A DNA stretch of 64,000 nucleotides, from the NCBI GenBank assembly GCA_001179505.1, contig CDMY01000473.1:5680-69679 (forward strand), written 5' to 3'. Both the position numbers and the translations under genes were made by a program. The DNA is from Vitrella brassicaformis CCMP3155. Its lineage: Eukaryota; Protista; Chromerida. This document shows positions 16,672-26,112 of the stretch, piece after piece; positions within the stretch are counted from its first letter, which is position 1, and the number at the start of each line of letters is the position of its first letter. Below the pieces are notes generated by a model. That model was not told the origin of the DNA. It saw only the letters and a list, made by a program, of their open reading frames with translations, and searched no databases.

Positions 16672-19600
16672 ATGCTTTTCGTCGCCGCCGTCAGCATGAG
16701 TCTCTTCATTGCTTCCGGTGCGAGCGTGCTGACTCACCACTTCCCAAATGCCGTAGCGGCGTTCCTAGAGGCGCCAGCGTCCAACGCTCTCCTCAGGTGT
16801 TGAATGGGTGTCACAGATCTACGCCCTCTGGATGCATGCTTCGTATGCTTGGTTCCTTCTCCTTTTGGTGTGTATGTATGTGCTGCAGGCACTGTCCGTC
16901 TTCTTCGCTGCTTCGTGTCCGTCGGCACCGCGATGCCCTTCGTGCTACAAACGGCACTGGTCAGTCACAGCACACGACACACACGACACACAAGCTGACA
17001 GCCGACACACGAACATCCTCGACTATCCATTTACGTGTGCGCGTGCGTTGCAGACGCCGTCCTGGCCCCTCCCTCTGACACAGACACCGACACGCCCACG
17101 TCCGTCGACATCGACGCCACCCTGACAGGCCTCAAGACGTCCCTTCGACGATACGGAGGCGAGATCATCCAACCCAACACACCCGGCGTCATCCAGGCGT
17201 ATGACGACAAAGGCAATGATGATGGTGCTGGTGGGCGTGAGGAAGAGCAGCCGTTCGATGAGGACGGCTTGCGTGAGGAGGTGCTGGGTGCGTCTGGCGG
17301 CCTGTCGCTGACCGATGTGGCGAGGGAGCGGAGGGGGGTGAATGAGGCTCCCGCTGGGGCTGCTGGTGGGGGAGGGCCTGCAGGCAACGACACTGCTGCT
17401 GGAGGTGAGGAGTACCTCTCGCCCATGGGGCTGGACTGGGAGAGGGCATTTAGTCTCGTCGACGAACAACAAGGTAGGTGAGTCACTCGAGGGCATGACC
17501 GTTCGTTCGTTCTGCTTGGCGTGTGTGTTAAGCCGTTGCTCATTTCGGCGTGTGTGTGGCAGAGATCGACCCGATGCTCGTTGCCTTCAACGCGGCGCTG
17601 AGTGCGTTCGATCGGCAGGGTCGGGGCAAAGAGGCCATGGAGGCCGTCAAGGTACGTCAACCAGCCACGCACACACACACACACAGTGTGATGATTCGTG
17701 TGTGTCTGTGTGTGTGTCTGTGTGATTGGTTCGTTCAGGAGATGTGGTCAGTGGGTGTGAAGCCTGACATGGTGACCTACACGGCAGCCATGTCGGCGTG
17801 CTGCAAGGCACACATGCCACAAGAGGTAGGTACAGCTTCATGGCCGCCTGAATGACCATCGCTCGTTCGTATGCGTGTGTGCGTGTGTGTGTGTGTGTGT
17901 GTGAGTTCAGGTGAAGCAGCTGCAGGAGTGGATGAGTGCTCAGGCGCTGAAGCCCGACGTGGTCATCTACAACATCATGCTCGAGTCGGCCACACACGGT
18001 GTGCACAAGTGCGATGGATGGATGCCATCGCCCGACGAATGTGTGTGAGCTGTGCCGCGAGTCTGGGTGGTGTGTGTCTGTGTGTGCAGACAATGACTGG
18101 GTGGGTGCGGCGAGCCTCTACGAGGAGATGAAGAAAGACCCCACGCTTGAGCCGACTGAACTCTCATACCTGCACATACTCACGTACACCCACACACAGA
18201 GAGGGAGAGGGGGAGGGGGAGGGAGAGAGCAACAACATGGCCTTGTTTCTCTGCGCTGTGTGGTGTGGTGTGATGTGATGCCTGCAGTGTGATGGACAGG
18301 GCAGAGCGGCCTGATCTCGCAATCCAGTACCTCACAGACTACCAAGCCGCTTTCCACAGGTAGGTAGGTACCTTCACAGCCACACACACACACACACACA
18401 CACACGTGTGCGCTGATCTCTGCACACCCAATTGCGTCATGTTTTACTGTCATTGCAGGATGACCCCCGCCGTGCTGAATGCGGTGCTCAGCTCGCTGGC
18501 CAAGTCGGGGTGGCTGACGGAAGCTATGGATATTTGGCAGAGGGTGGTGGGGGGCGACGGTGAGACGGCAGATGCCACCACTTACAGGCTCATGCTCATG
18601 TAAGGAGAGAGGGTGGCTGAGAGCACACCGTGCTCTCATCTCTGTCTGTCTGTCTGCCTCTTTCTAGTGCGTGTGTCAACGCCCGGTCGCCTGACATGGC
18701 CGAGGAGATCTGGGAAGGCTTCCAAACGAGCCAGGTGAGCTCACCACACATGTGCACCACCCATCCCCTTGTCTGTGGCTGGATGGATGTATGGGTCAGC
18801 ATTGGGCCCAGCGCGACGCATCCCATTTTCTCTACGCCCTGCGGGCCGCCGCGATCGGGGGAGACTTCGAGAGGGTGAGTGAGTGGAGGGAGGGTGACCA
18901 CACAGCACAACACACCTCCACACCCCACGGTGCGTGTGTGCGGCGTGTGCAGGCGTATGAGCTTATGTCAGGCATGCAAGACCACGGCCTGCAGGCGGCC
19001 ATCTCCCATTTCGAAGCCCTCATACAAGGCAACGCCCACACCACAGCCCACACACTCCACTTGACACCGCACCCATTCTCATTCTCTCTCTGTCTGTGGA
19101 TGCTGCAGCGTGTCGAGAGGCGGGGGAGTGGCGGGGCGCATTGCAGGCCCTCCGGCGGCTGTCGGCCGCCCGCATGCCGCCCACCCCCGCCATGTATGAG
19201 GACGTCATGGCGGCGTGTGCACGAGTTGGTGACTGGGAGCCCCTCCTGGGCATCTTCTCGGAGATGACCAAATCGTCCGGCCTCTCGCCCACGCCACTCA
19301 CCGTCCACTATGCCCTTGACGCCTGTTTTCGGCTCGACTAGTGTGTATGCCACACACAACGTTGCCTCTTCATATGTTCTGTGGAGGCGTTTGTTATTGT
19401 GTGTGTGTGTGTGTGTGTGTGTCAGTGCGCGTGATGCAGGTCAGCTGGTGCAGACGGCCCACGAGAGGCGGCTGACTCTGCTGCCGTCCACCCTGACGCT
19501 CATCGACAAGTGGCGGGAGCGCTCGCCCGACGTCCTGAGCGACGACATCATGCCCCCTCAGTTGCTCGAGGCACAGAGGAGGAGGCGTATCGGTGGTGGG

Positions 19601-20263
19601 GGTGCCGGCCCTCAGCCCATGCCCCCATCTCCATCACCCTCACAGCCGGAGCCTGCGGCAAGATCCACCCCACCCGAAATGACGCAGGGTGATCGTCGTG
19701 ACGAGAGAGGTCCTCCACGACAGCCGGAGAGGCCGCAAATGAGGCCTGCGGCACCGCCACAACCACCCCCACCCCGACCATCAAGACTCCCCCCTCCTGC
19801 TGCTGCCCCCCTTATCCGCCCTACAATGTCGCTCCCCTCCCCACCACCCCAGCCGATGCCCGGGATAGAGCGGCGGACAGAGGAGCCACCGGCGACTACA
19901 CCTGGTGTTAGTGAAGGCGAAGGCGGTGATGCGTTGACCGAGCTGGAGAGGATGCTGGCGAGAGCCAAGATGGGACAGCCTCTCGGACCGATGTCTGCTC
20001 CACCATCGGGTGACGACAAGAGTGCTCCTAGTGGTGGTGGCGGCGGTGCAGATGAGTGGGAGAGGCAATTGGATGATTTGGTGGCCCAGGCCGCCCAGGA
20101 GACAAGGAACGAGATGTTGCGGCAGAAAGAGGAGGCTAGAAAAGGGTCAGGGGAGGAGCCGCCCTCACCCCCACCACAACCACCACCAGCAGCAGTGCCT
20201 GATGGGGCGATGGACGTGCACCGCGACCCGGCTGCCAGGCTTCGCTTCCCGAGACTCGGTTAG
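16672..20263 (+). CDS. Pentatricopeptide repeat (PPR) protein, probable organelle (plastid)-targeted; about 14 exons
   Basis: PPR motifs VAFNAALSAFDRQGRGKEAMEAVKEMWSVGVKPD, MVTYTAAMSACCKAHMPQE, VVIYNIMLES, AVLNAVLSSLAKSGWLTEAMDIWQRV and AMYEDVMAACARVGDWEPLLGIFSEM. Exons 16672-16796, 16889-16959 and from 17054 join in frame. The C-terminus is Pro-rich. Confidence 0.9.
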
Positions 20264-21311
20264 GGTGGGTGGTTGGGTGTTTATATTGCATAGGTTTGTG
20301 CGTGTTTGTGTGTGGGTGTGGTGTGATGTGATCTGATGAACGATACTCTTTGCACAATGGACCTCTGAATAAAAAGCACGAGCACAGCACACACACCCGT
20401 CTGGCGTCGCAGTGCCTGCCTTTGCAGCTCACACGACCGGCCGGCCGGCCGGCCGGCCAGCAGGTGATGCGTGCAGGCAGGTGTCTATTCGTCAATAGCC
20501 TGCCTAACCTGCCTACACACACACACACAGCCCTCTCTCCCCCACTCTCTCTCCTTACACCATTCACTGCTTCCGTGCTTGCTGCGTCATATATCTCTCT
20601 CTCTGTCTGCCGTTGTGGGGCTTCTCTGTTGGCCGCCGCAACATGGGACGCACGAGAGCGTTCAAGCCCCGAATGTCAAGAGTTGCAGCAGCAAGCCGAA
20701 GCGATCATAACTGCAGTCAGTGTGGCAGCACTGCCACACGAGAAGCAAGCCTTATCTCGTTCTGTCTGTTTCCTCCCTCCTGTCTCTCTTGTCCTGTCTT
20801 TGGTGCTGCATTCGTTGCATTGGCCTGGATATGGCGTCATGGTGACTCGGTCTCGCGCCCATGACGTGCAACGGACGAGCGCATTTAAACCTCGCCCGTG
20901 GGACGTCATCTGCTAAGAGACCAAGTCAGCAGAACGACCACGAGATCCAGGAAGCAGCCCGGCCACAATCGAAAAGAACGGCAAAATAGTGCCACGGTTG
21001 ACACGACAGACGGATGGATGGATAAAAGACCCACACACACACGCCCCTCTCTCTCGTGCGTCGGTCTTTCTTACGTACGCAGCCACACACTTACACACAG
21101 AAAGACAGACAGACAGTATAGCCCCACAATGCATTCAATGCCGGCACACACGCAGAGCAGACAGAGACCCAACTGACTGACTGACTTGAATTACCTGCCT
21201 ACCTATCCCCCAACCACCCCTCGCCACGACAGCCAGCCACAACAGACCAGCCACAATAGCCAGCCAGCCACAGCAGCCCAGCCACACCAGGCAGGCCATG
21301 TACACCAGTTA

Positions 21312-22526
21312 TCAATAAAGCTTCAGCGACAGCGTCATCACAGCCTACACCACATCACACAACACAACACAACACACAAACAACACATTTCCCGCCCATC
21401 CGCCACCCCGTGTGTCTGAGTGAGTGAGTGAGTGGATCTCCCCGCCACCTACCGTCAGGTGTCCCAGTTCCTCAGCGGACACCTCGTGCTTCCCATTGGG
21501 CACCACGTCGAAGGTCGCGTTGATGCCCCGCTGCCCCAGCATCTTCTTGAGCTTCTCGCCACACCCGGGAGGCGCCACCGTGTCGTTGGAGCCGTGCAGC
21601 AAAAACAGCTTCGAAAACTTGGCTGAGGGCGAGGTGGCCTTCTCGGCGAGAATGTCCAGAACCTTGCCGGGCAGCACCTGCATCCCGAAGCAGCACACAC
21701 CGCCAATCGCCACCTGCAGGAACACACAAAGGAAGAAGACACACTCAGGGGTGGCTGGGGTGGCTGGTGGAGATGGTTGTGGGTGTGGGTGCGGTTAAAG
21801 AAATACATCGAGTTGGGTGAGTGCGGTGAAAAGGGCGATGAGCGCGCCCTGGCCGACGCCGCCGAGCATGAGCTTCTCGGGTTCCTGTCGGTTCTCGCGC
21901 AGCTCACGCTTGATCAGCTGCGCCACCAACGCACAACTCTCCTCGATCTCACCTACAGGCAGACACACAGACACACACACAAGAGGTATATGTGTGTGTG
22001 TGTGTCTGTGTGTGTGTGTCTGTGTGTATACCGAGCGCCTGGAGCTCTTCGAGTTTGAGTTTCTCGTCGAGTGACCCGCCGGATCCGCCGCTATTGGACT
22101 TGGCCGCGGTGGTGTCGAAGAGGAAGTCGCCACACCACCAGCTCGGGTCCTCCTGCACACACATCATGCACACCGTAGTGGCAGGACCTGCCTGTTGTGT
22201 GCGTGCGTGTGCGTTGCGTGTGCTGCCTGCGGTGGGGTGACGGTGGGTGGCGCACATACGTCAGTTCCGACTGTCTTGGGTGCTGACGGGATGACCACCT
22301 TGACGTGCTCCAACACCTCATCCCTTCACACACACACACACACAGGGAGTGGAGTGGTGGTTTCGTGTGTGGTGCTGTGCTCACGAGTCGGCTCGGCTCG
22401 CTTACTTGCTGAAGGACCGCTTGAAGAGCGAGAGGTACTCGTCGGGGATCTGGCCGAAGTCGTGCAGCCACACCAAGGTGGCCTTCTCGTCGCCCGCTGA
22501 CTCACACTCGACAATGTGCAGACCTG

Positions 22527-22558
<32 letters not shown>

Positions 22559-25464
22559 CAAGGCACACATCATGCGTGTCTTGCCTCTGAGATGAGAGTG
22601 TGTGTGTGCGTCCTTCCTGACCTTCGAGAGTCTTCTTGATCTGCGTCTCGGGGATGTTCTGTGCAAACAGGGACTCCTCCAGCTCCCTGCATCCACACAC
22701 AAACCAGCACACAAACACGTCCATCCCTCCATCCATCCATCCACTCATGCCGCGCCGCGCTCACTTGCTCTTGATGGCCTTGTTCTTCTCCTCGGCGGCC
22801 TTGGCCTGCAGGCCGGCTTCCTCCTCCTGGATGGTCGGCACAGCCAGCAACGGCTTGGCGATCCGGCCCTTCTCCGTCAAAAACTTCATAGCAGACTGCA
22901 CACACACACACACACGCAGGTGGACAGATGCACACAGCAGAGAGTGCGGTGGGGTGGGGGTGGGATGGCTGGCTGACCGTGATATCGGTGAGGGGGAACT
23001 CTCGTGTCTGGATGGCGAGCTTCTTGTTGTCGATGAGCTTGGCGAAGGACTCCAGGTTCTCAACCATTCTAGATAGAAGCAGACACCACACCACACCCAA
23101 CACCACACACACGTGTCGTGTCGTCATCCAGCCGCCAGTCACTCTCTCTCTCAGACGGAGGGGACAGACAGACTGACAGACTGACTTGGTTTGGTTCCTG
23201 CCGGACTCCAGCCATCGATTGAGGTAGAAGCTCTCAACCTTGATCTCAGAACTGCAGTCAGTCAGGCACCGTCCCACGTGTGTGAGTGACATTCATTATC
23301 TATCTCTCATATGTGTCGGTAGGTACCTTGCTTACCTGACGAGCATGTGCCAAGGGAGCTGGAAGGGCTGGCCGGACATGCCGCCGTAGACCACCACACG
23401 CCCACCCACATCGAGCGCCTGCGTCAGCTTGGCAGTGCTCGTGCTGCCCAACACGCAGTCCAGAGCCATCTTGGGCAGAGCCGCACCCTGCAGTCAGTGC
23501 AATCAGACAATGAGAGGGAGTTGGGTTGGTGCCTTGCCTTGCTCACTCACTGACCTCAGCGAGCAGTCTGTGTCTGATGGGGTCATCTTCGGCGAACACA
23601 CGATTGGCGCCCAGCTCGTGAAGATGCTCAACCAGCGTCTCGAACGACGACTCGCTGTGACGACTGCACACACACCACACCACACATCCAAATGAATTCG
23701 CATCCGCGACTGTGTGTGCGTGTGAGTGTGGGTGTGGGTGTGGGTGGGGTACCGACCGTACCGGATGACGGCAATGGGTCTGAAGCCGATGAGTTTGGCG
23801 AGCTGGATGACCAGCTGCCCCACCAGCCCGTTGGCTCCGTTGACGACCACGCCGTCGCCGGGCTGCAGGCTCTCGGAACACAGGTCCACCAGACGGTAAG
23901 CTGCACACACACACACATGGAGAAACAGAGATTCGCGCGTGCGCGTGGGCGTGTGTGTGCCCGCAGCTTACCGAGGTATAGTTCCTTTGCGAGTGCGGCA
24001 TATTCGATGGGGATGAGTTCCTGGGGTATCTTCAGGAGGTCCCTCTCGCGCCACACGGCCGCCACCTGCCAAGTCCCCAGGGTGTCCTTCAGAGGCACCA
24101 CCCAATCGCCCTCGCGCAAATCCTTCACACCGGGGCCGACCTTCTCAACCACAGCCACACCCTCTGCACACACACACACACAGATTGGTTTTTTGGGTGC
24201 GGCGGAGGGCGCGGAAGGCTCACCAGAGCCGAGGATGGTGCGGTCTCCGGCGATTGTGCCGTAGTTGTAGGCGGCACTGGTGTGGCCGAGTGGGAGGGCG
24301 CTTGTTGTGCTGTCCTGGTGCCAGCTGCGCAACACGTCCTCGCCAGCACTGATGCGATTCATCCACACCACCAGCCACACACACACATGAGATGAGATGA
24401 GCACATCACTACACTCAGAGAGGCCTGGCCTTGCCTTCTGTCTGTCTCTCCCTTCCTTACGCCATGAGAGTGATGTCATAGGGGTTGACGGCCGCATATC
24501 TGATGTTGACGAGCACCTCGCCCCACTCCAGCTCGGGCCTCAGCTTGACCGTGATGGTCTCGCACAGCCTGGAAGGGTCGTCCATGACGTCGCTCCGCTT
24601 GCTGATCTTGATGTCCTTCCGGCGAACCACCTTCTGCGTCGCGTGCCGGCACCGGTGCGGCACCGTCTCGTAGGACGTCTTGCAGGTGCCCAGACGATCC
24701 AGAATGATGTCGTCCGTTATCAGCTGACATAACAATGGGCAGACAGACAGGAGCCAGGCAAGGCGAGACAAGGGAGCAGAGTGTGCGGTTCGAAGTGGGG
24801 ACAAGTAAGGGTAGAGAGGAGAGGACGTGTGTACCGAGTCCTTCTGGTTTCTGGATCTGAGCCACTCCTGGAAGCCCTCCTCGTGGGTCTGGTCGCCCTT
24901 TGGCCGCACCAGCCGCTCGGCCACGTCGATGACGTTGGCGTCCGACGCCTTGTCGCCACCGCCGGCCTTGCCGCCCTTGCCCTTGCTGAAGCTCTCCATG
25001 AACTCCTCCTCAGCCGACCTGACCGCACGGCCGGTCTTGTCGTAGTGGGCACGGAGCTTGCCGTCAGACAACACCTGGGGGACACACAGACAGAGAGACG
25101 GAAGGGGATTGTGTGTGTGTGTGTGTGTGTGTTGGGTGGTGGCGTGGATTGTCTGGCAGTGCAGTTCCCGACCGACCTCATAGGCCTTGTTGATGTTTTG
25201 GAAGACGGTGGGGTCTCCGCCCTTGTCCGGGTGCTCCTTGACCGCCTTCTGCCGAAACGCCTGGAGGGTACACACACAACACACAACACACCACACGCAG
25301 CGCAACACGCACACACAATGCACTGCACCACATGCGAGGCGATGCAGCCTTCTCATCTCAGCCTGGCTCGTGTCTGTCTGACTGACCTTGCGGATCTCGG
25401 CGAGGGGGGCGGTTTTGTCGACGCCGAGGACGGCATAGAGGTCCAGATCTCCTTGGCCAGACAT
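21312..25464 (-). CDS. Fusion protein: DnaJ J-domain + MECR-like trans-2-enoyl reductase (MDR family) + phospholipase/carboxylesterase (Abhydrolase_2)-fold domain
   Basis: J domain: DLYAVLGV...HPDKGGDPTVFQNINKAYEVLSD...YDKTG. MDR: VNPYDI, GSEGVAVVEKVGPGVKDLREGDWVVP, AYRLV, NGANGLVGQLVIQLAKLIG, VVYGGMSGQP. Hydrolase: ATLVWLHDFG, VKVVIPSAP, LGGVGQGA, LHGSNDTV, GKHEV. The junctions checked are in frame and the stop TGA is at 21312-21314. Confidence 0.85.
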
Positions 25465-26112
25465 CCTATCCTCACTCACACACCTGCTTCAGTCGAGATA
25501 TATGCCGCTCCTTGCTGCACAACCGCAACCACACAGGGACGAGCAGATCTGTGTGGCGGACTCGGTTTAGGCAGGGCAGGCAGGAGACTGACTGACTGAC
25601 TCAGTGCGGGTGTGACAGTGTACTGTACGGGGGATGTAAGCGTTGCCACTGCCGACTGACTCACTGAGTCTGCTTTTCAGCAAGCGATGACGGGAGCCAC
25701 GAGCCCTTCCCTCCGTCTACACGGCGGGCGAAGATCTGCTCTCGAGTTTTTTTCTCTCCTGCGAGCTCTTGAGGTCGCCTGCGAGCTGAGCTTGCAGAGC
25801 AGCGAAGGATCTGGGCGCCTTTATCTCCTCAGCGCTTCCTTAGACACGCCTCGGGTGCGTCTGCGCTGTGTCGCACCTTATCGCCAATTATCAACCTTCT
25901 TATCCACGTCAACGGTCGCGAGCGTTGCATGACCTCGAAGGGTGCTCGGGGGAGCGGCGCGCGAGGAGGGGCGATGGCGGGCGCCACAGCGCACACCACC
26001 CAAGTATTTGCGCGCAGGTGACGGACTGACTGACCCGCGGCCGGCCGCAGACGACAGACAAGACCCAACGAAGTATTTTCCGCCCGTCCGTCATCCTTCG
26101 GAACAGAGGAGG

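What the first reader, a model, noticed from the sequence alone, without database searches (positions are those of the whole stretch)
21312..25464. J-domain + enoyl-thioester reductase + thioesterase-fold triple fusion
Seen: one spliced ORF contains an intact HPD J-domain, a full MECR/Etr1-like MDR reductase and an acyl-protein-thioesterase/carboxylesterase-fold domain. The reductase-to-hydrolase link (...QIKKTLE-G-LHIVECESAGDEKATLVWLHDFG) splices in frame. Knowledge: J-domains recruit Hsp70, MECR reduces enoyl-ACP/CoA, and Abhydrolase_2 enzymes (APT1/LYPLA) act on acyl thioesters. I know no characterised protein with this architecture. Inference: a chaperone-coupled acyl-processing module resembling a stand-alone ER+TE piece of a FAS/PKS, or a lipid-sensing co-chaperone.
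Basis: partly seen in the sequence, partly recalled or inferred. Interest (0 to 1): 0.8.

Follow-up and report, generated by a model that had tools for sequence, protein, structure and literature searches.

The report
J-domain, reductase-like, dead-esterase fusion
The alga Vitrella brassicaformis makes one spliced protein that joins an Hsp70-recruiting J-domain to a fatty-acid-reductase-like domain and an esterase-like domain lacking its catalytic serine; relatives share the design, databases already list it, and nobody has studied it.

Summary
Window 21312-25464 (minus strand) holds a 19-coding-exon gene with GT-AG introns throughout. It encodes 825 aa, identical to NCBI CEM15887.1 / UniProt A0A0G4FQ05 of Vitrella brassicaformis CCMP3155. 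Two MMETSP transcript contigs contain the spliced CDS letter for letter. Spliced contigs from four further runs carry both domain junctions, including the splice that removes an in-frame TGA after the reductase. All three Pfam domains pass their cut-offs (DnaJ, ADH_N/ADH_zinc_N, Abhydrolase_2).

The architecture is not unique. J + MECR-like + Abhydrolase_2 proteins occur in Chromera, in two apicomplexan-type transcriptomes and in two dinoflagellate-like transcripts. The J + MECR-like core (about 500 aa) is widespread in green algae.

- The esterase nucleophile is Gly in Vitrella. It is Ser only in Chromera.
- MECR's catalytic Tyr is kept in Vitrella but lost in most relatives.
- MECR's Trp311 is never kept.
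- HPD, a linker motif and the NADPH-binding signature are conserved.

The best reading is a cytosolic class-C Hsp70 co-chaperone that uses enzyme-derived domains as ligand- or client-binding modules. It is not an ER+TE piece of a FAS/PKS. No paper on it was found. The scan also noted this same stretch in an overlapping window, not on other DNA.

The parts
21312..25464 (-). Coding region of the gene (19 coding exons, 825 codons plus TGA). Exons: 25464-25387, 25260-25177, 25074-24835, 24723-24461, 24348-24224, 24163-23972, 23900-23762, 23663-23555, 23487-23336, 23251-23186, 23068-22978, 22895-22765, 22686-22622, 22523-22406, 22323-22260, 22152-22032, 21952-21807, 21713-21453, 21344-21312.
   Evidence: model. 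(identical to P0079/CEM15887.1). (exact match to cDNA contigs L004/L005). (splice joints in four runs).
25629..25752 (-). 5' UTR exon (at least this much). A UTR intron follows at 25628-25515, then 50 nt of UTR (25514-25465) that carry an in-frame TGA at 25491-25489, 9 codons before the ATG.
   Evidence: mapping of cDNA 1-174. (upstream in-frame translation has a stop). So there is no N-terminal targeting extension.
25039..25443 (-). J-domain (residues 8-66, split over exons 1-3). The HPD codons are at 25233-25225.
   Evidence: Pfam DnaJ 8.8e-18, profile positions 1-63 of 63. HPD is invariant in 37 of 37 family members. The AF2 pLDDT here is above 90.
24847..24888 (-). Family-specific linker motif T-H-E-E-G-F-Q-E-W-L-R-S-R-N (residues 117-130). 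The family consensus is S-H-T-x-G-F-E-A-W-x-R-x-R-G.
   Evidence: It is nearly invariant across green algal and alveolate members. No Pfam family covers it. The AF2 model shows a helix at 118-127, but confidence is low.
22842..24648 (-). MECR/Etr1-like MDR domain (residues about 160-531, exons 4-12). Features: the alveolate-specific insertion (residues 223-246; 223-248 = 24347-24270), the Tyr94 equivalent Y251 at 24263-24261, the NADPH-binding signature N-G-A-N-G-L-V-G-Q at 23841-23803, and the Trp311 equivalent Y470 at 23226-23224.
   Evidence: The best PDB sequence match is human MECR, 1.6e-41 for the single sequence and 1.2e-60 for the profile. The best Foldseek matches are 1zsy/7ayb/2vcy with TMt 0.81-0.84.
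22762..22764 (-). In-frame TGA formed by the donor of intron 12 (AA|GTGAGC). Splicing removes it. Retaining the intron would end the protein after the reductase-like domain.
   Evidence: Sequence. The joint 22685>22764 is present in all four runs. The stop is absent from cDNA L004/L005.
22623..22832 (-). Charged helical connector between the reductase-like and hydrolase-like domains (residues 535-578, end of exon 12 plus exon 13). It carries the conserved P-T-I-Q-E-E and L-F motifs.
   Evidence: The AF2 model shows helices 535-565 and 570-578. The motifs are conserved in orthologues.
21315..22521 (-). Abhydrolase_2 (APT/LYPLAL1-like) domain, residues 580-825 (exons 14-19). The GxSxG position is Gly713 (21854-21852). 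Asp772 lies in 21596-21579 and His804 in 21494-21480.
   Evidence: Pfam Abhydrolase_2 1.2e-12. PDB LYPLAL1 3u0v 3.7e-10, with Ser aligned to Gly. Foldseek matches APT1, APT2, LYPLAL1 and carboxylesterases at about 1e-10. Atlas structural neighbours are all Abhydrolase_2. RNA and DNA letters agree (table 3: none).

Best explanation
This is a real, expressed gene. It belongs to a conserved family of class-C (type III) J-domain proteins, which are Hsp70 co-chaperones. The N-terminal J-domain has an intact HPD motif. It is followed by a family-specific motif (SHTxGFEAWxRxRG), then a domain derived from the mitochondrial 2-enoyl-thioester reductase MECR/Etr1. In myzozoan alveolates, a charged helix and an APT/LYPLAL1-fold alpha/beta-hydrolase domain follow. 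The protein has no targeting peptide, so it should act in the cytosol or nucleus and not in mitochondrial fatty-acid synthesis.

Shown here: the fusion exists in mRNA; it is conserved; and the Vitrella hydrolase domain lacks the serine nucleophile, so it cannot work as a canonical serine thioesterase.

Inferred: the J-domain stimulates Hsp70 ATPase. The two enzyme-derived domains act mainly as binding modules. The reductase-like Rossmann fold would bind NADP(H) and possibly an acyl-thioester. The dead hydrolase pocket would bind a ligand or client. These modules would decide where, when or on what Hsp70 is engaged. Residual enoyl-reductase activity in Vitrella itself is possible, because its Tyr is kept, but reductase activity is not the conserved function of the family.
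For: - Gene and mRNA.
- Domains: all three are above Pfam cut-offs. Human MECR matches at 1.6e-41 and LYPLAL1 at 3.7e-10. Structural matches agree.
- No DnaJ_C or zinc-finger hits, so class C.
- Conservation: the triple architecture occurs in Chromera Cvel_4507 (934 aa), TSA GHVS01026202 (832 aa), an MMETSP transcript (843 aa), a Logan transcript (837 aa) and, in part, Selenidium (771 aa). J+MECR-like proteins occur in many green algae.
- Residues: HPD is present in 37 of 37 members, the linker motif is near-invariant, and the cofactor signature (G342, D343, N348, G355, Q360) is conserved. The Tyr94 equivalent is present in only about 14 of 34 members. The Trp311 equivalent is never Trp.
- Hydrolase nucleophile: Gly (Vitrella), Asp (GHVS), Ser (Chromera), Gly and Gly (dinoflagellate-like). 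His is kept in all five.
- An in-frame stop lies 9 codons upstream of the ATG in the mRNA, so there is no presequence.
- Precedent: Euglena complex I subunit NDUEG3 is an MECR-like protein without the catalytic Tyr, and no reductase activity was detected in the Eg-CI sample (PMC10884005).
Against: No biochemical data exist for any member. Y251 and the NADPH motif are intact in Vitrella, so its reductase domain could still be an enzyme. Y251 lies in a loop modelled at pLDDT below 50, so its placement in the active site is unverified. Chromera keeps a full Ser-Asp-His triad, so the hydrolase domain may be active in some lineages, and the ancestral fusion could have been enzymatic. The alignment around the Tyr loop is gappy, so the Tyr counts are approximate. 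The cytosolic location rests only on the absence of an N-terminal extension.
Confidence: 0.6

Rival explanations
1. This is a chaperone-coupled bifunctional enzyme. The MECR-like domain reduces enoyl-thioesters, the hydrolase domain releases the acyl chain, and the J-domain brings in Hsp70.
For: Vitrella keeps the Tyr94 equivalent (Y251) and the NADPH signature. Asp and His of the hydrolase triad are kept. Chromera has a full Ser-Asp-His triad. MDR+esterase fusions of consecutive enzymes exist elsewhere: the Atlas holds ADH plus S-formylglutathione-hydrolase clusters, though this is only a lead.
Against: The nucleophile is Gly in Vitrella and absent in 4 of 5 orthologues. The dinoflagellate-like members also lose the Asp. 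The catalytic Tyr is missing in Chromera, GHVS, Selenidium, the dinoflagellate-like members and many green algae, and Trp311 is never conserved. No ACP domain or phosphopantetheine site is present. So no lineage examined keeps both active sites intact: Vitrella has the Tyr but no Ser, and Chromera has the Ser but no Tyr.
Confidence: 0.2
2. This is a gene-model or assembly artefact: two or three adjacent genes (J-protein, MECR, esterase) were wrongly merged.
For: An in-frame TGA sits exactly at the end of the reductase exon (22764-22762). An ATG-initiated ORF overlaps the next exon. RNA contigs also merge this gene with the downstream convergent PPR gene, which shows that contigs can bridge genes.
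Against: The TGA lies inside a GT..AG intron that is spliced out in every run examined and in both cDNA contigs. The reductase homology begins upstream of any internal Met in exon 4, so it needs the J exons for a start codon. Complete single ORFs with the same domain order exist in independent transcriptomes of other species. The connector exon carries conserved motifs.
Confidence: 0.02
3. The gene produces two products by regulated intron retention. The spliced form is the triple fusion. Retaining intron 12 uses the donor-embedded TGA to make a green-alga-like J+reductase protein of 557 aa.
For: The stop codon is built into the donor, so retention truncates the protein cleanly after '...AIKSK', at the point where the green algal proteins end. 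Selenidium has two transcript isoforms of 464 and 780 codons in one 90% cluster.
Against: No retained-intron contig was seen among the pieces listed, but contigs drop rare variants and the reads tool was capped at one call. The position of the TGA may be coincidence.
Confidence: 0.12

Closest known systems
Human MECR / yeast Etr1p (mitochondrial 2-enoyl thioester reductase, MDR superfamily)
   Same: It is the best sequence match (1.6e-41 single, 1.2e-60 profile) and the best structural match (TMt 0.81-0.84). It has the same GroES-like plus Rossmann layout, a similar NADPH signature (N-x-A-N-x-x-V-G-Q against N-A-S-N-S-G-V-G-Q), and in Vitrella a Tyr aligned with Tyr94.
   Different: There is no mitochondrial presequence; a J-domain sits at the N-terminus instead. 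The Trp311 equivalent is Tyr (Asn or Ser in green algae). A 24-aa alveolate-specific insertion lies next to the Tyr loop. The Tyr is not conserved across the family.
LYPLAL1 / APT1 / APT2 / bacterial carboxylesterases (Pfam Abhydrolase_2)
   Same: Same fold and family (Pfam 1.2e-12; LYPLAL1 3.7e-10; Foldseek about 1e-10). The Asp and His of the triad are in place.
   Different: The GxSxG serine is Gly in Vitrella, and Asp or Gly in 3 of the other 4 orthologues. A roughly 40-residue low-confidence insertion lies at residues 640-670. The domain is fused behind a reductase-like domain instead of standing alone.
Class C (type III) J-domain proteins
   Same: An N-terminal J-domain with invariant HPD and a basic helix II. 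There is no G/F region, zinc finger or DnaJ C-terminal domain. The rest of the protein is an unrelated module presumed to give specificity.
   Different: In the papers I could search, I found no characterised J-protein whose partner module is an MDR reductase or an Abhydrolase_2 fold.
Euglena gracilis complex I subunit NDUEG3 (MECR-like, PDB 8iuf_E3)
   Same: It is the next-best PDB sequence match after the true MECR/Etr1 enzymes (1.1e-23 single; 3.3e-33 profile). It is a documented MECR-like protein that lacks the catalytic Tyr and serves structurally, and no reductase activity was detected in the Eg-CI sample (PMC10884005).
   Different: NDUEG3 is a mitochondrial complex I subunit. No J-domain match to it was seen here. 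The Vitrella protein has no presequence.
FAS/PKS ER-TE didomain
   Same: Both combine an MDR-type enoyl reductase with an alpha/beta-hydrolase fold that follows it.
   Different: PKS ER domains match far more weakly (CurF 1.5e-9, 3slk 6.5e-8, against 1.6e-41 for MECR). The hydrolase belongs to Abhydrolase_2, and no Pfam hit to the FAS/PKS thioesterase family appeared. There is no ACP, and the nucleophile is missing.

Membership tests
J-domain proteins (Hsp40), class C | J-domain fold of about 65 residues matching Pfam DnaJ | tested here: met
   PF00226 8.8e-18, profile positions 1-63 of 63, residues 8-66. The AF2 model shows helices at pLDDT above 90.
J-domain proteins (Hsp40), class C | HPD tripeptide between helices II and III | tested here: met
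   H36-P37-D38, invariant in 37 of 37 family members.
J-domain proteins (Hsp40), class C | No G/F region, zinc-finger or DnaJ C-terminal domains (this separates class C from classes A and B) | tested here: met
   No PF00684 or PF01556 hit in P0079 or its orthologues, whereas true class A proteins in the same search carry them.
J-domain proteins (Hsp40), class C | Stimulates Hsp70 ATPase | not testable with these tools
   This needs a biochemical assay.
MECR/Etr1 2-enoyl thioester reductases | MDR fold without zinc, closest to MECR/Etr1 | tested here: met
   The best PDB matches by sequence and by fold are MECR and Etr1p.
MECR/Etr1 2-enoyl thioester reductases | Catalytic tyrosine (Tyr94 human, Tyr79 Etr1p) | tested here: inconclusive
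   Y251 aligns with Tyr94 in Vitrella. However, it lies in a pLDDT<50 loop and is absent in Chromera, GHVS, Selenidium, the dinoflagellate-like members and many green algal members.
MECR/Etr1 2-enoyl thioester reductases | Trp311 (human numbering) in the substrate pocket | tested here: not met
   The aligned residue is Tyr470 in Vitrella. It is Asn, Ser, His or Cys elsewhere and never Trp. That this residue is critical in MECR is my recollection of the literature on human MECR (Chen et al. 2008), not something tested here.
MECR/Etr1 2-enoyl thioester reductases | NADPH-binding glycine-rich signature | tested here: met
   N-G-A-N-G-L-V-G-Q aligns with N-A-S-N-S-G-V-G-Q. N348, G355 and Q360 are invariant or near-invariant in the family. 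Binding itself was not tested.
MECR/Etr1 2-enoyl thioester reductases | Mitochondrial targeting presequence (role in mtFAS) | tested here: not met
   The protein starts 7 residues before the J-domain, and the mRNA has an in-frame stop 9 codons upstream of the ATG.
Abhydrolase_2 serine hydrolases (APT1/2, LYPLAL1, carboxylesterases) | Alpha/beta-hydrolase fold of the Abhydrolase_2 type | tested here: met
   Pfam 1.2e-12. Foldseek and Atlas neighbours are all from this family.
Abhydrolase_2 serine hydrolases (APT1/2, LYPLAL1, carboxylesterases) | Nucleophilic Ser in GxSxG | tested here: not met
   The site reads G-V-G-Q-G. Gly713 aligns with the Ser of LYPLAL1 and of two bacterial carboxylesterases. 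The RNA shows the same letters as the DNA.
Abhydrolase_2 serine hydrolases (APT1/2, LYPLAL1, carboxylesterases) | Catalytic Asp and His | tested here: met
   D772 (H-G-S-N-D) and H804 (G-K-H-E-V) align with the family's Asp and His.
FAS/PKS ER-TE module | Carrier protein domain and a FAS/PKS-type thioesterase domain in the same polypeptide | tested here: not met
   No Pfam hits other than DnaJ, ADH_N, ADH_zinc_N(_2) and Abhydrolase_2 at E<=0.01.

The most novel reading that the evidence does not exclude
The J + MECR-like family is found in green algae and myzozoan alveolates, and possibly in haptophytes with a SAM domain. It could be a metabolite-gated Hsp70 co-chaperone. In this reading, the reductase-derived Rossmann pocket senses NADPH/NADP+ or acyl-thioesters. 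In Myzozoa, a catalytically dead acyl-protein-thioesterase fold would act as a reader of acyl chains or acylated clients. Hsp70 action would then be coupled to redox or lipid state, or directed at lipidated proteins.
Probability: 0.2. Interest if true: 0.7.

Novelty: new variant of a known kind. Interest (0 to 1): 0.4.

Why it matters
J-domain proteins give Hsp70 its specificity, and most class-C members outside model organisms have unknown partners. This one pairs the J-domain with two enzyme folds whose active sites are lost in a mosaic pattern across lineages, while the J-domain, a new linker motif and the cofactor signature stay fixed. That pattern suggests enzymes recruited as binding modules.

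There is also an annotation point. UniProt names these proteins 'enoyl-[acyl-carrier-protein] reductase'. That name is probably wrong as a functional label for many members. They lack a presequence, the Trp311 equivalent is never Trp, and many lack the catalytic Tyr. The label could therefore mislead reconstructions of fatty-acid synthesis in chromerids, dinoflagellates and green algae.

The family is absent from the hits for well-studied apicomplexans. Its biology would therefore have to be worked out in algae or chromerids.

Tried and rejected
1. Alternative exon-5 acceptor at 24276. It removes a 24-aa insertion and aligns gap-free with human MECR. I rejected it because all four RNA runs and both cDNA contigs use 24348, and the insertion (G-E-D-x-L-x-S-W/Y) is conserved in alveolate orthologues.

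2. Separate genes with the TGA at 22764-22762 as a true stop. Rejected.

3. A very long 3' UTR or a fourth domain, raised because RNA contigs run about 1.8 kb past 21000. The cause is a convergent PPR gene whose transcript overlaps in assembly.

4. Pfam on single exons gave only sub-threshold hits, because the exons are short. The whole database protein was needed.

5. Searching the hydrolase domain alone for stand-alone relatives (133-422 aa) gave nothing. The search is word-limited, so this blank is uninformative.

6. Whether the diatom complex I 'unknown protein 1' (B7G395, 500 aa, MECR-like) belongs to this J-family. Neither HPDK string was found in the supplements I searched, the listed peptides look unrelated by eye, and the authors describe its function as not reliably predictable from sequence comparisons. 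I did not pursue it.

7. A link to Symbiodinium BiP interactors (PMC12880724). Irrelevant.

8. The species behind TSA GHVS01026202 could not be resolved from the eLife paper text.

9. Literature searches by architecture and by accession found no study of the family.

No reads-tool refusals occurred. Read laying was given 4801 letters.
Full report
**What is in the window**

On the minus strand between 25464 and 21312 I built a 19-exon coding model directly from the sequence. Every intron is GT..AG and 60-126 nt long, and the frame is continuous for 825 codons to a TGA. The translation is identical, residue for residue, to database protein P0079. P0079 is NCBI CEM15887.1 / UniProt A0A0G4FQ05 of Vitrella brassicaformis CCMP3155. 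The window matches contig CDMY01000473.1 of assembly GCA_001179505.1.

**Transcript evidence**

Two MMETSP transcript contigs (L004, 6230 nt; L005, 4184 nt) contain my spliced 2478-nt CDS letter for letter at positions 175-2652. Independently, Logan contigs from four runs in three studies laid on 21000-25800 show CT..AC joints on the plus strand, which are GT..AG on the gene's strand. All 12 listed joints of that kind coincide with predicted introns; six further joints were not shown. They include:
- 24723>24835, which joins the J-domain exons to the reductase exons.
- 22685>22764, which joins the last reductase exon to the connector exon.

One 4537-nt record runs through the CDS from the 3' UTR to within about 40 nt of the ATG.

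The second junction is the critical one. The donor of intron 12 (AA|GTGAGC) creates an in-frame TGA that would end the protein after the reductase-like domain if the intron stayed in. All four runs and both cDNA contigs have it spliced out.

The RNA also settled a point where I was wrong. An alternative acceptor at 24276 gives a gap-free alignment to human MECR, but the transcripts use 24348. The 24 extra residues are conserved in alveolate orthologues.

The mRNA has a 5' UTR intron (25628-25515) and an in-frame stop 9 codons before the ATG. The protein therefore begins 7 residues before its J-domain and has no room for a signal or transit peptide. RNA contigs that continue about 1.8 kb beyond 21000 are explained by a convergent PPR gene whose 3' end overlaps in assembly.

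**Domains**

| Region | Pfam on the whole protein | Other evidence |
|---|---|---|
| J-domain, residues 8-66 | DnaJ 8.8e-18 | HPD at H36-P37-D38 |
| Reductase-like, residues about 160-531 | ADH_N 6.8e-08 (202-287); ADH_zinc_N 2.6e-11 (354-473) | Human MECR 1.6e-41 single, 1.2e-60 family profile; Foldseek TMt 0.81-0.84 |
| Hydrolase-like, residues 580-825 | Abhydrolase_2 1.2e-12 (681-814) | LYPLAL1 3.7e-10; then carboxylesterases, SOBER1, APT2 |

All Pfam hits are above their curated cut-offs. PKS ER domains score only 1e-8 to 1e-9 against the reductase-like region. For the hydrolase-like region, a domain-only model and an Atlas shape search return only Abhydrolase_2 proteins. The full-length model (mean pLDDT 81.7) also shows a long charged helix (535-565) between the two enzyme-like domains.

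**Catalytic residues**

In three independent PDB alignments, the GxSxG serine of LYPLAL1 and of two bacterial carboxylesterases aligns with Gly713. The Vitrella site reads G-V-G-Q-G. The catalytic Asp (D772) and His (H804) are retained. RNA and DNA agree at this site (table 3).

In the reductase-like domain:
- Tyr251 aligns with MECR Tyr94.
- The NADPH signature is preserved.
- MECR Trp311 aligns with Tyr470.
- Tyr251 lies in a loop modelled at pLDDT below 50.

**Relatives**

An exhaustive HMMER scan of 1.84 billion representatives, followed by a profile search, found the same triple architecture in five other sources:
- Chromera velia Cvel_4507 (934 aa).
- TSA GHVS01026202 (832 aa, complete ORF; species not resolved here).
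- An MMETSP transcript (843 aa) that closely resembles a Fugacium kawagutii model.
- A Logan RNA contig (837 aa).
- Selenidium pygospionis (771 aa), where the hydrolase part is only partial.

The J + MECR-like core without the hydrolase (about 470-650 aa) is common in green algae. It occurs in Chloropicon, Chlorella, Micractinium, Gonium, Pleodorina, Chlamydomonas eustigma, Helicosporidium, Picocystis, Prasinoderma, a pedinophyte and Mesostigma. It also forms a 354-member cluster in marine samples. The Atlas adds a haptophyte cluster with DnaJ + ADH_zinc_N + SAM_1, which is only a lead.

A quick ML tree separates green algae (support 96), the chromerid/apicomplexan-type group (98) and the dinoflagellate-like pair (100). 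Neither alveolate group nests inside the green algae, and the careful tree search did not finish.

**Pattern of conservation**

Across 37 members:
- HPD is invariant.
- A motif between the J-domain and the reductase-like domain (SHTxGFEAWxRxRG; T-H-E-E-G-F-Q-E-W-L-R-S-R-N in Vitrella) is almost invariant and matches no Pfam family.
- The cofactor-binding signature stays conserved: P-G-D, then N-x-A-N-S-x-V-G-Q.
- The Tyr94 equivalent is present in only about 14 of 34 sequences that cover the loop. Those are Vitrella and a subset of chlorophytes. Chromera, GHVS, Selenidium and the dinoflagellate-like members lack it.
- The Trp311 equivalent is never Trp.

In the hydrolase domain:

| Lineage | Nucleophile | Asp | His |
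|---|---|---|---|
| Vitrella | Gly | kept | kept |
| GHVS | Asp | kept | kept |
| Chromera | Ser | kept | kept |
| Dinoflagellate-like (two) | Gly | Asn | kept |

No lineage examined keeps both active sites intact. Vitrella has the Tyr but no Ser. Chromera has the Ser but no Tyr.

**Interpretation**

Several elements are under uniform constraint: the J-domain, the linker motif, the nucleotide-binding fold and the overall folds of both enzyme-like domains. Catalysis is not under uniform constraint. I therefore read the protein as a class-C J-domain co-chaperone of cytosolic Hsp70 whose specificity modules derive from an enoyl-thioester reductase and an acyl-protein-thioesterase-type hydrolase.

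Shown here: the fusion, its expression, its conservation, the missing nucleophile and the absence of a presequence.

Inferred: Hsp70 stimulation, NADP(H) or acyl ligand binding, and a non-catalytic role.

A precedent for MECR-like proteins that lack the Tyr and serve structurally is Euglena complex I subunit NDUEG3. It is the next-best PDB sequence match after the true MECR/Etr1 enzymes (PMC10884005).

The domain families are wrong for that, there is no carrier domain, and the hydrolase is dead.

**Novelty**

The gene model and its three Pfam domains are already in NCBI, UniProt, MMETSP and EukProt. UniProt labels the protein 'enoyl-[ACP] reductase'.

I found no paper that studies it, by architecture or by accession. 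A paper on chromerid fatty-acid synthesis lists a different, plastid FabI-type enoyl reductase and does not mention this protein. It is best classed as a new, uncharacterised variant of a known kind, the class-C J-proteins. As a by-product, the automatic enzyme name is probably misleading.

**Limits**

- All RNA evidence comes from assembled contigs, which cannot rule out minor isoforms such as intron-12 retention.
- The Tyr-loop alignment is gappy.
- The blank search for stand-alone relatives of the hydrolase domain says nothing.
- Absence from core apicomplexans rests only on their not appearing among the hits.

Noticed in passing
window 21345-25386 (introns of the gene): 17 of 18 coding-region introns hold (GT)n or (CA)n runs of at least 3 units. 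In 5 of them a (GT)n run abuts the acceptor directly (GTGTGTGTGTGCAG), and a sixth ends in AAG. This may be a general trait of Vitrella introns or a splicing signal.
   Followed up: partly
window 22762-22764: The donor of intron 12 embeds an in-frame TGA. Retaining the intron would therefore yield a J+reductase protein that ends where green algal orthologues end.
   Followed up: partly
window about 16700-20260 (plus strand); L003:15202-18769: A convergent 816-aa PPR-repeat gene lies about 1 kb downstream. Transcript assemblies (L004, Logan contigs) merge it with this gene, which implies overlapping or abutting 3' UTRs.
   Followed up: partly
window 24457-25479 (minus strand): A 340-codon ORF reads straight through introns 1-3 without a stop. 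This looks like chance. It was useful as a stop-free reference for searching.
   Followed up: yes
P0002 / P0080 (Selenidium pygospionis transcripts): Two transcript isoforms of the orthologue, with ORFs of 464 and 780 codons, fall in one 90% cluster. The longer one degenerates into an L-T-R-L-T-S repeat inside the hydrolase region, which suggests a frameshift or a chimeric 3' end.
   Followed up: no
Atlas cluster, row 1: A 96-member cluster of DnaJ + Abhydrolase_2 proteins (representative 856 aa) is labelled 'Viruses 87%, Uroviricota'. This is probably a taxonomic mislabel of marine eukaryote contigs, but I did not check it.
   Followed up: no
Supplement of PMC12854811 (Phaeodactylum proteome): Protein B7G7H8 is named '3R-hydroxyacyl-[ACP] dehydrase (Fragment)', yet its best Arabidopsis hit is a DNAJ N-terminal domain protein. 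It may be another J-domain fusion to a fatty-acid-synthesis-type fold. I did not examine the sequence.
   Followed up: no
PDB 8iuf_E3 against P0079:150-575: Euglena complex I subunit NDUEG3 is the closest solved non-MECR relative of the reductase-like domain (1.1e-23). Foldseek aligns 485 columns, more than for MECR itself. Any relationship beyond the MDR fold was not examined.
   Followed up: partly
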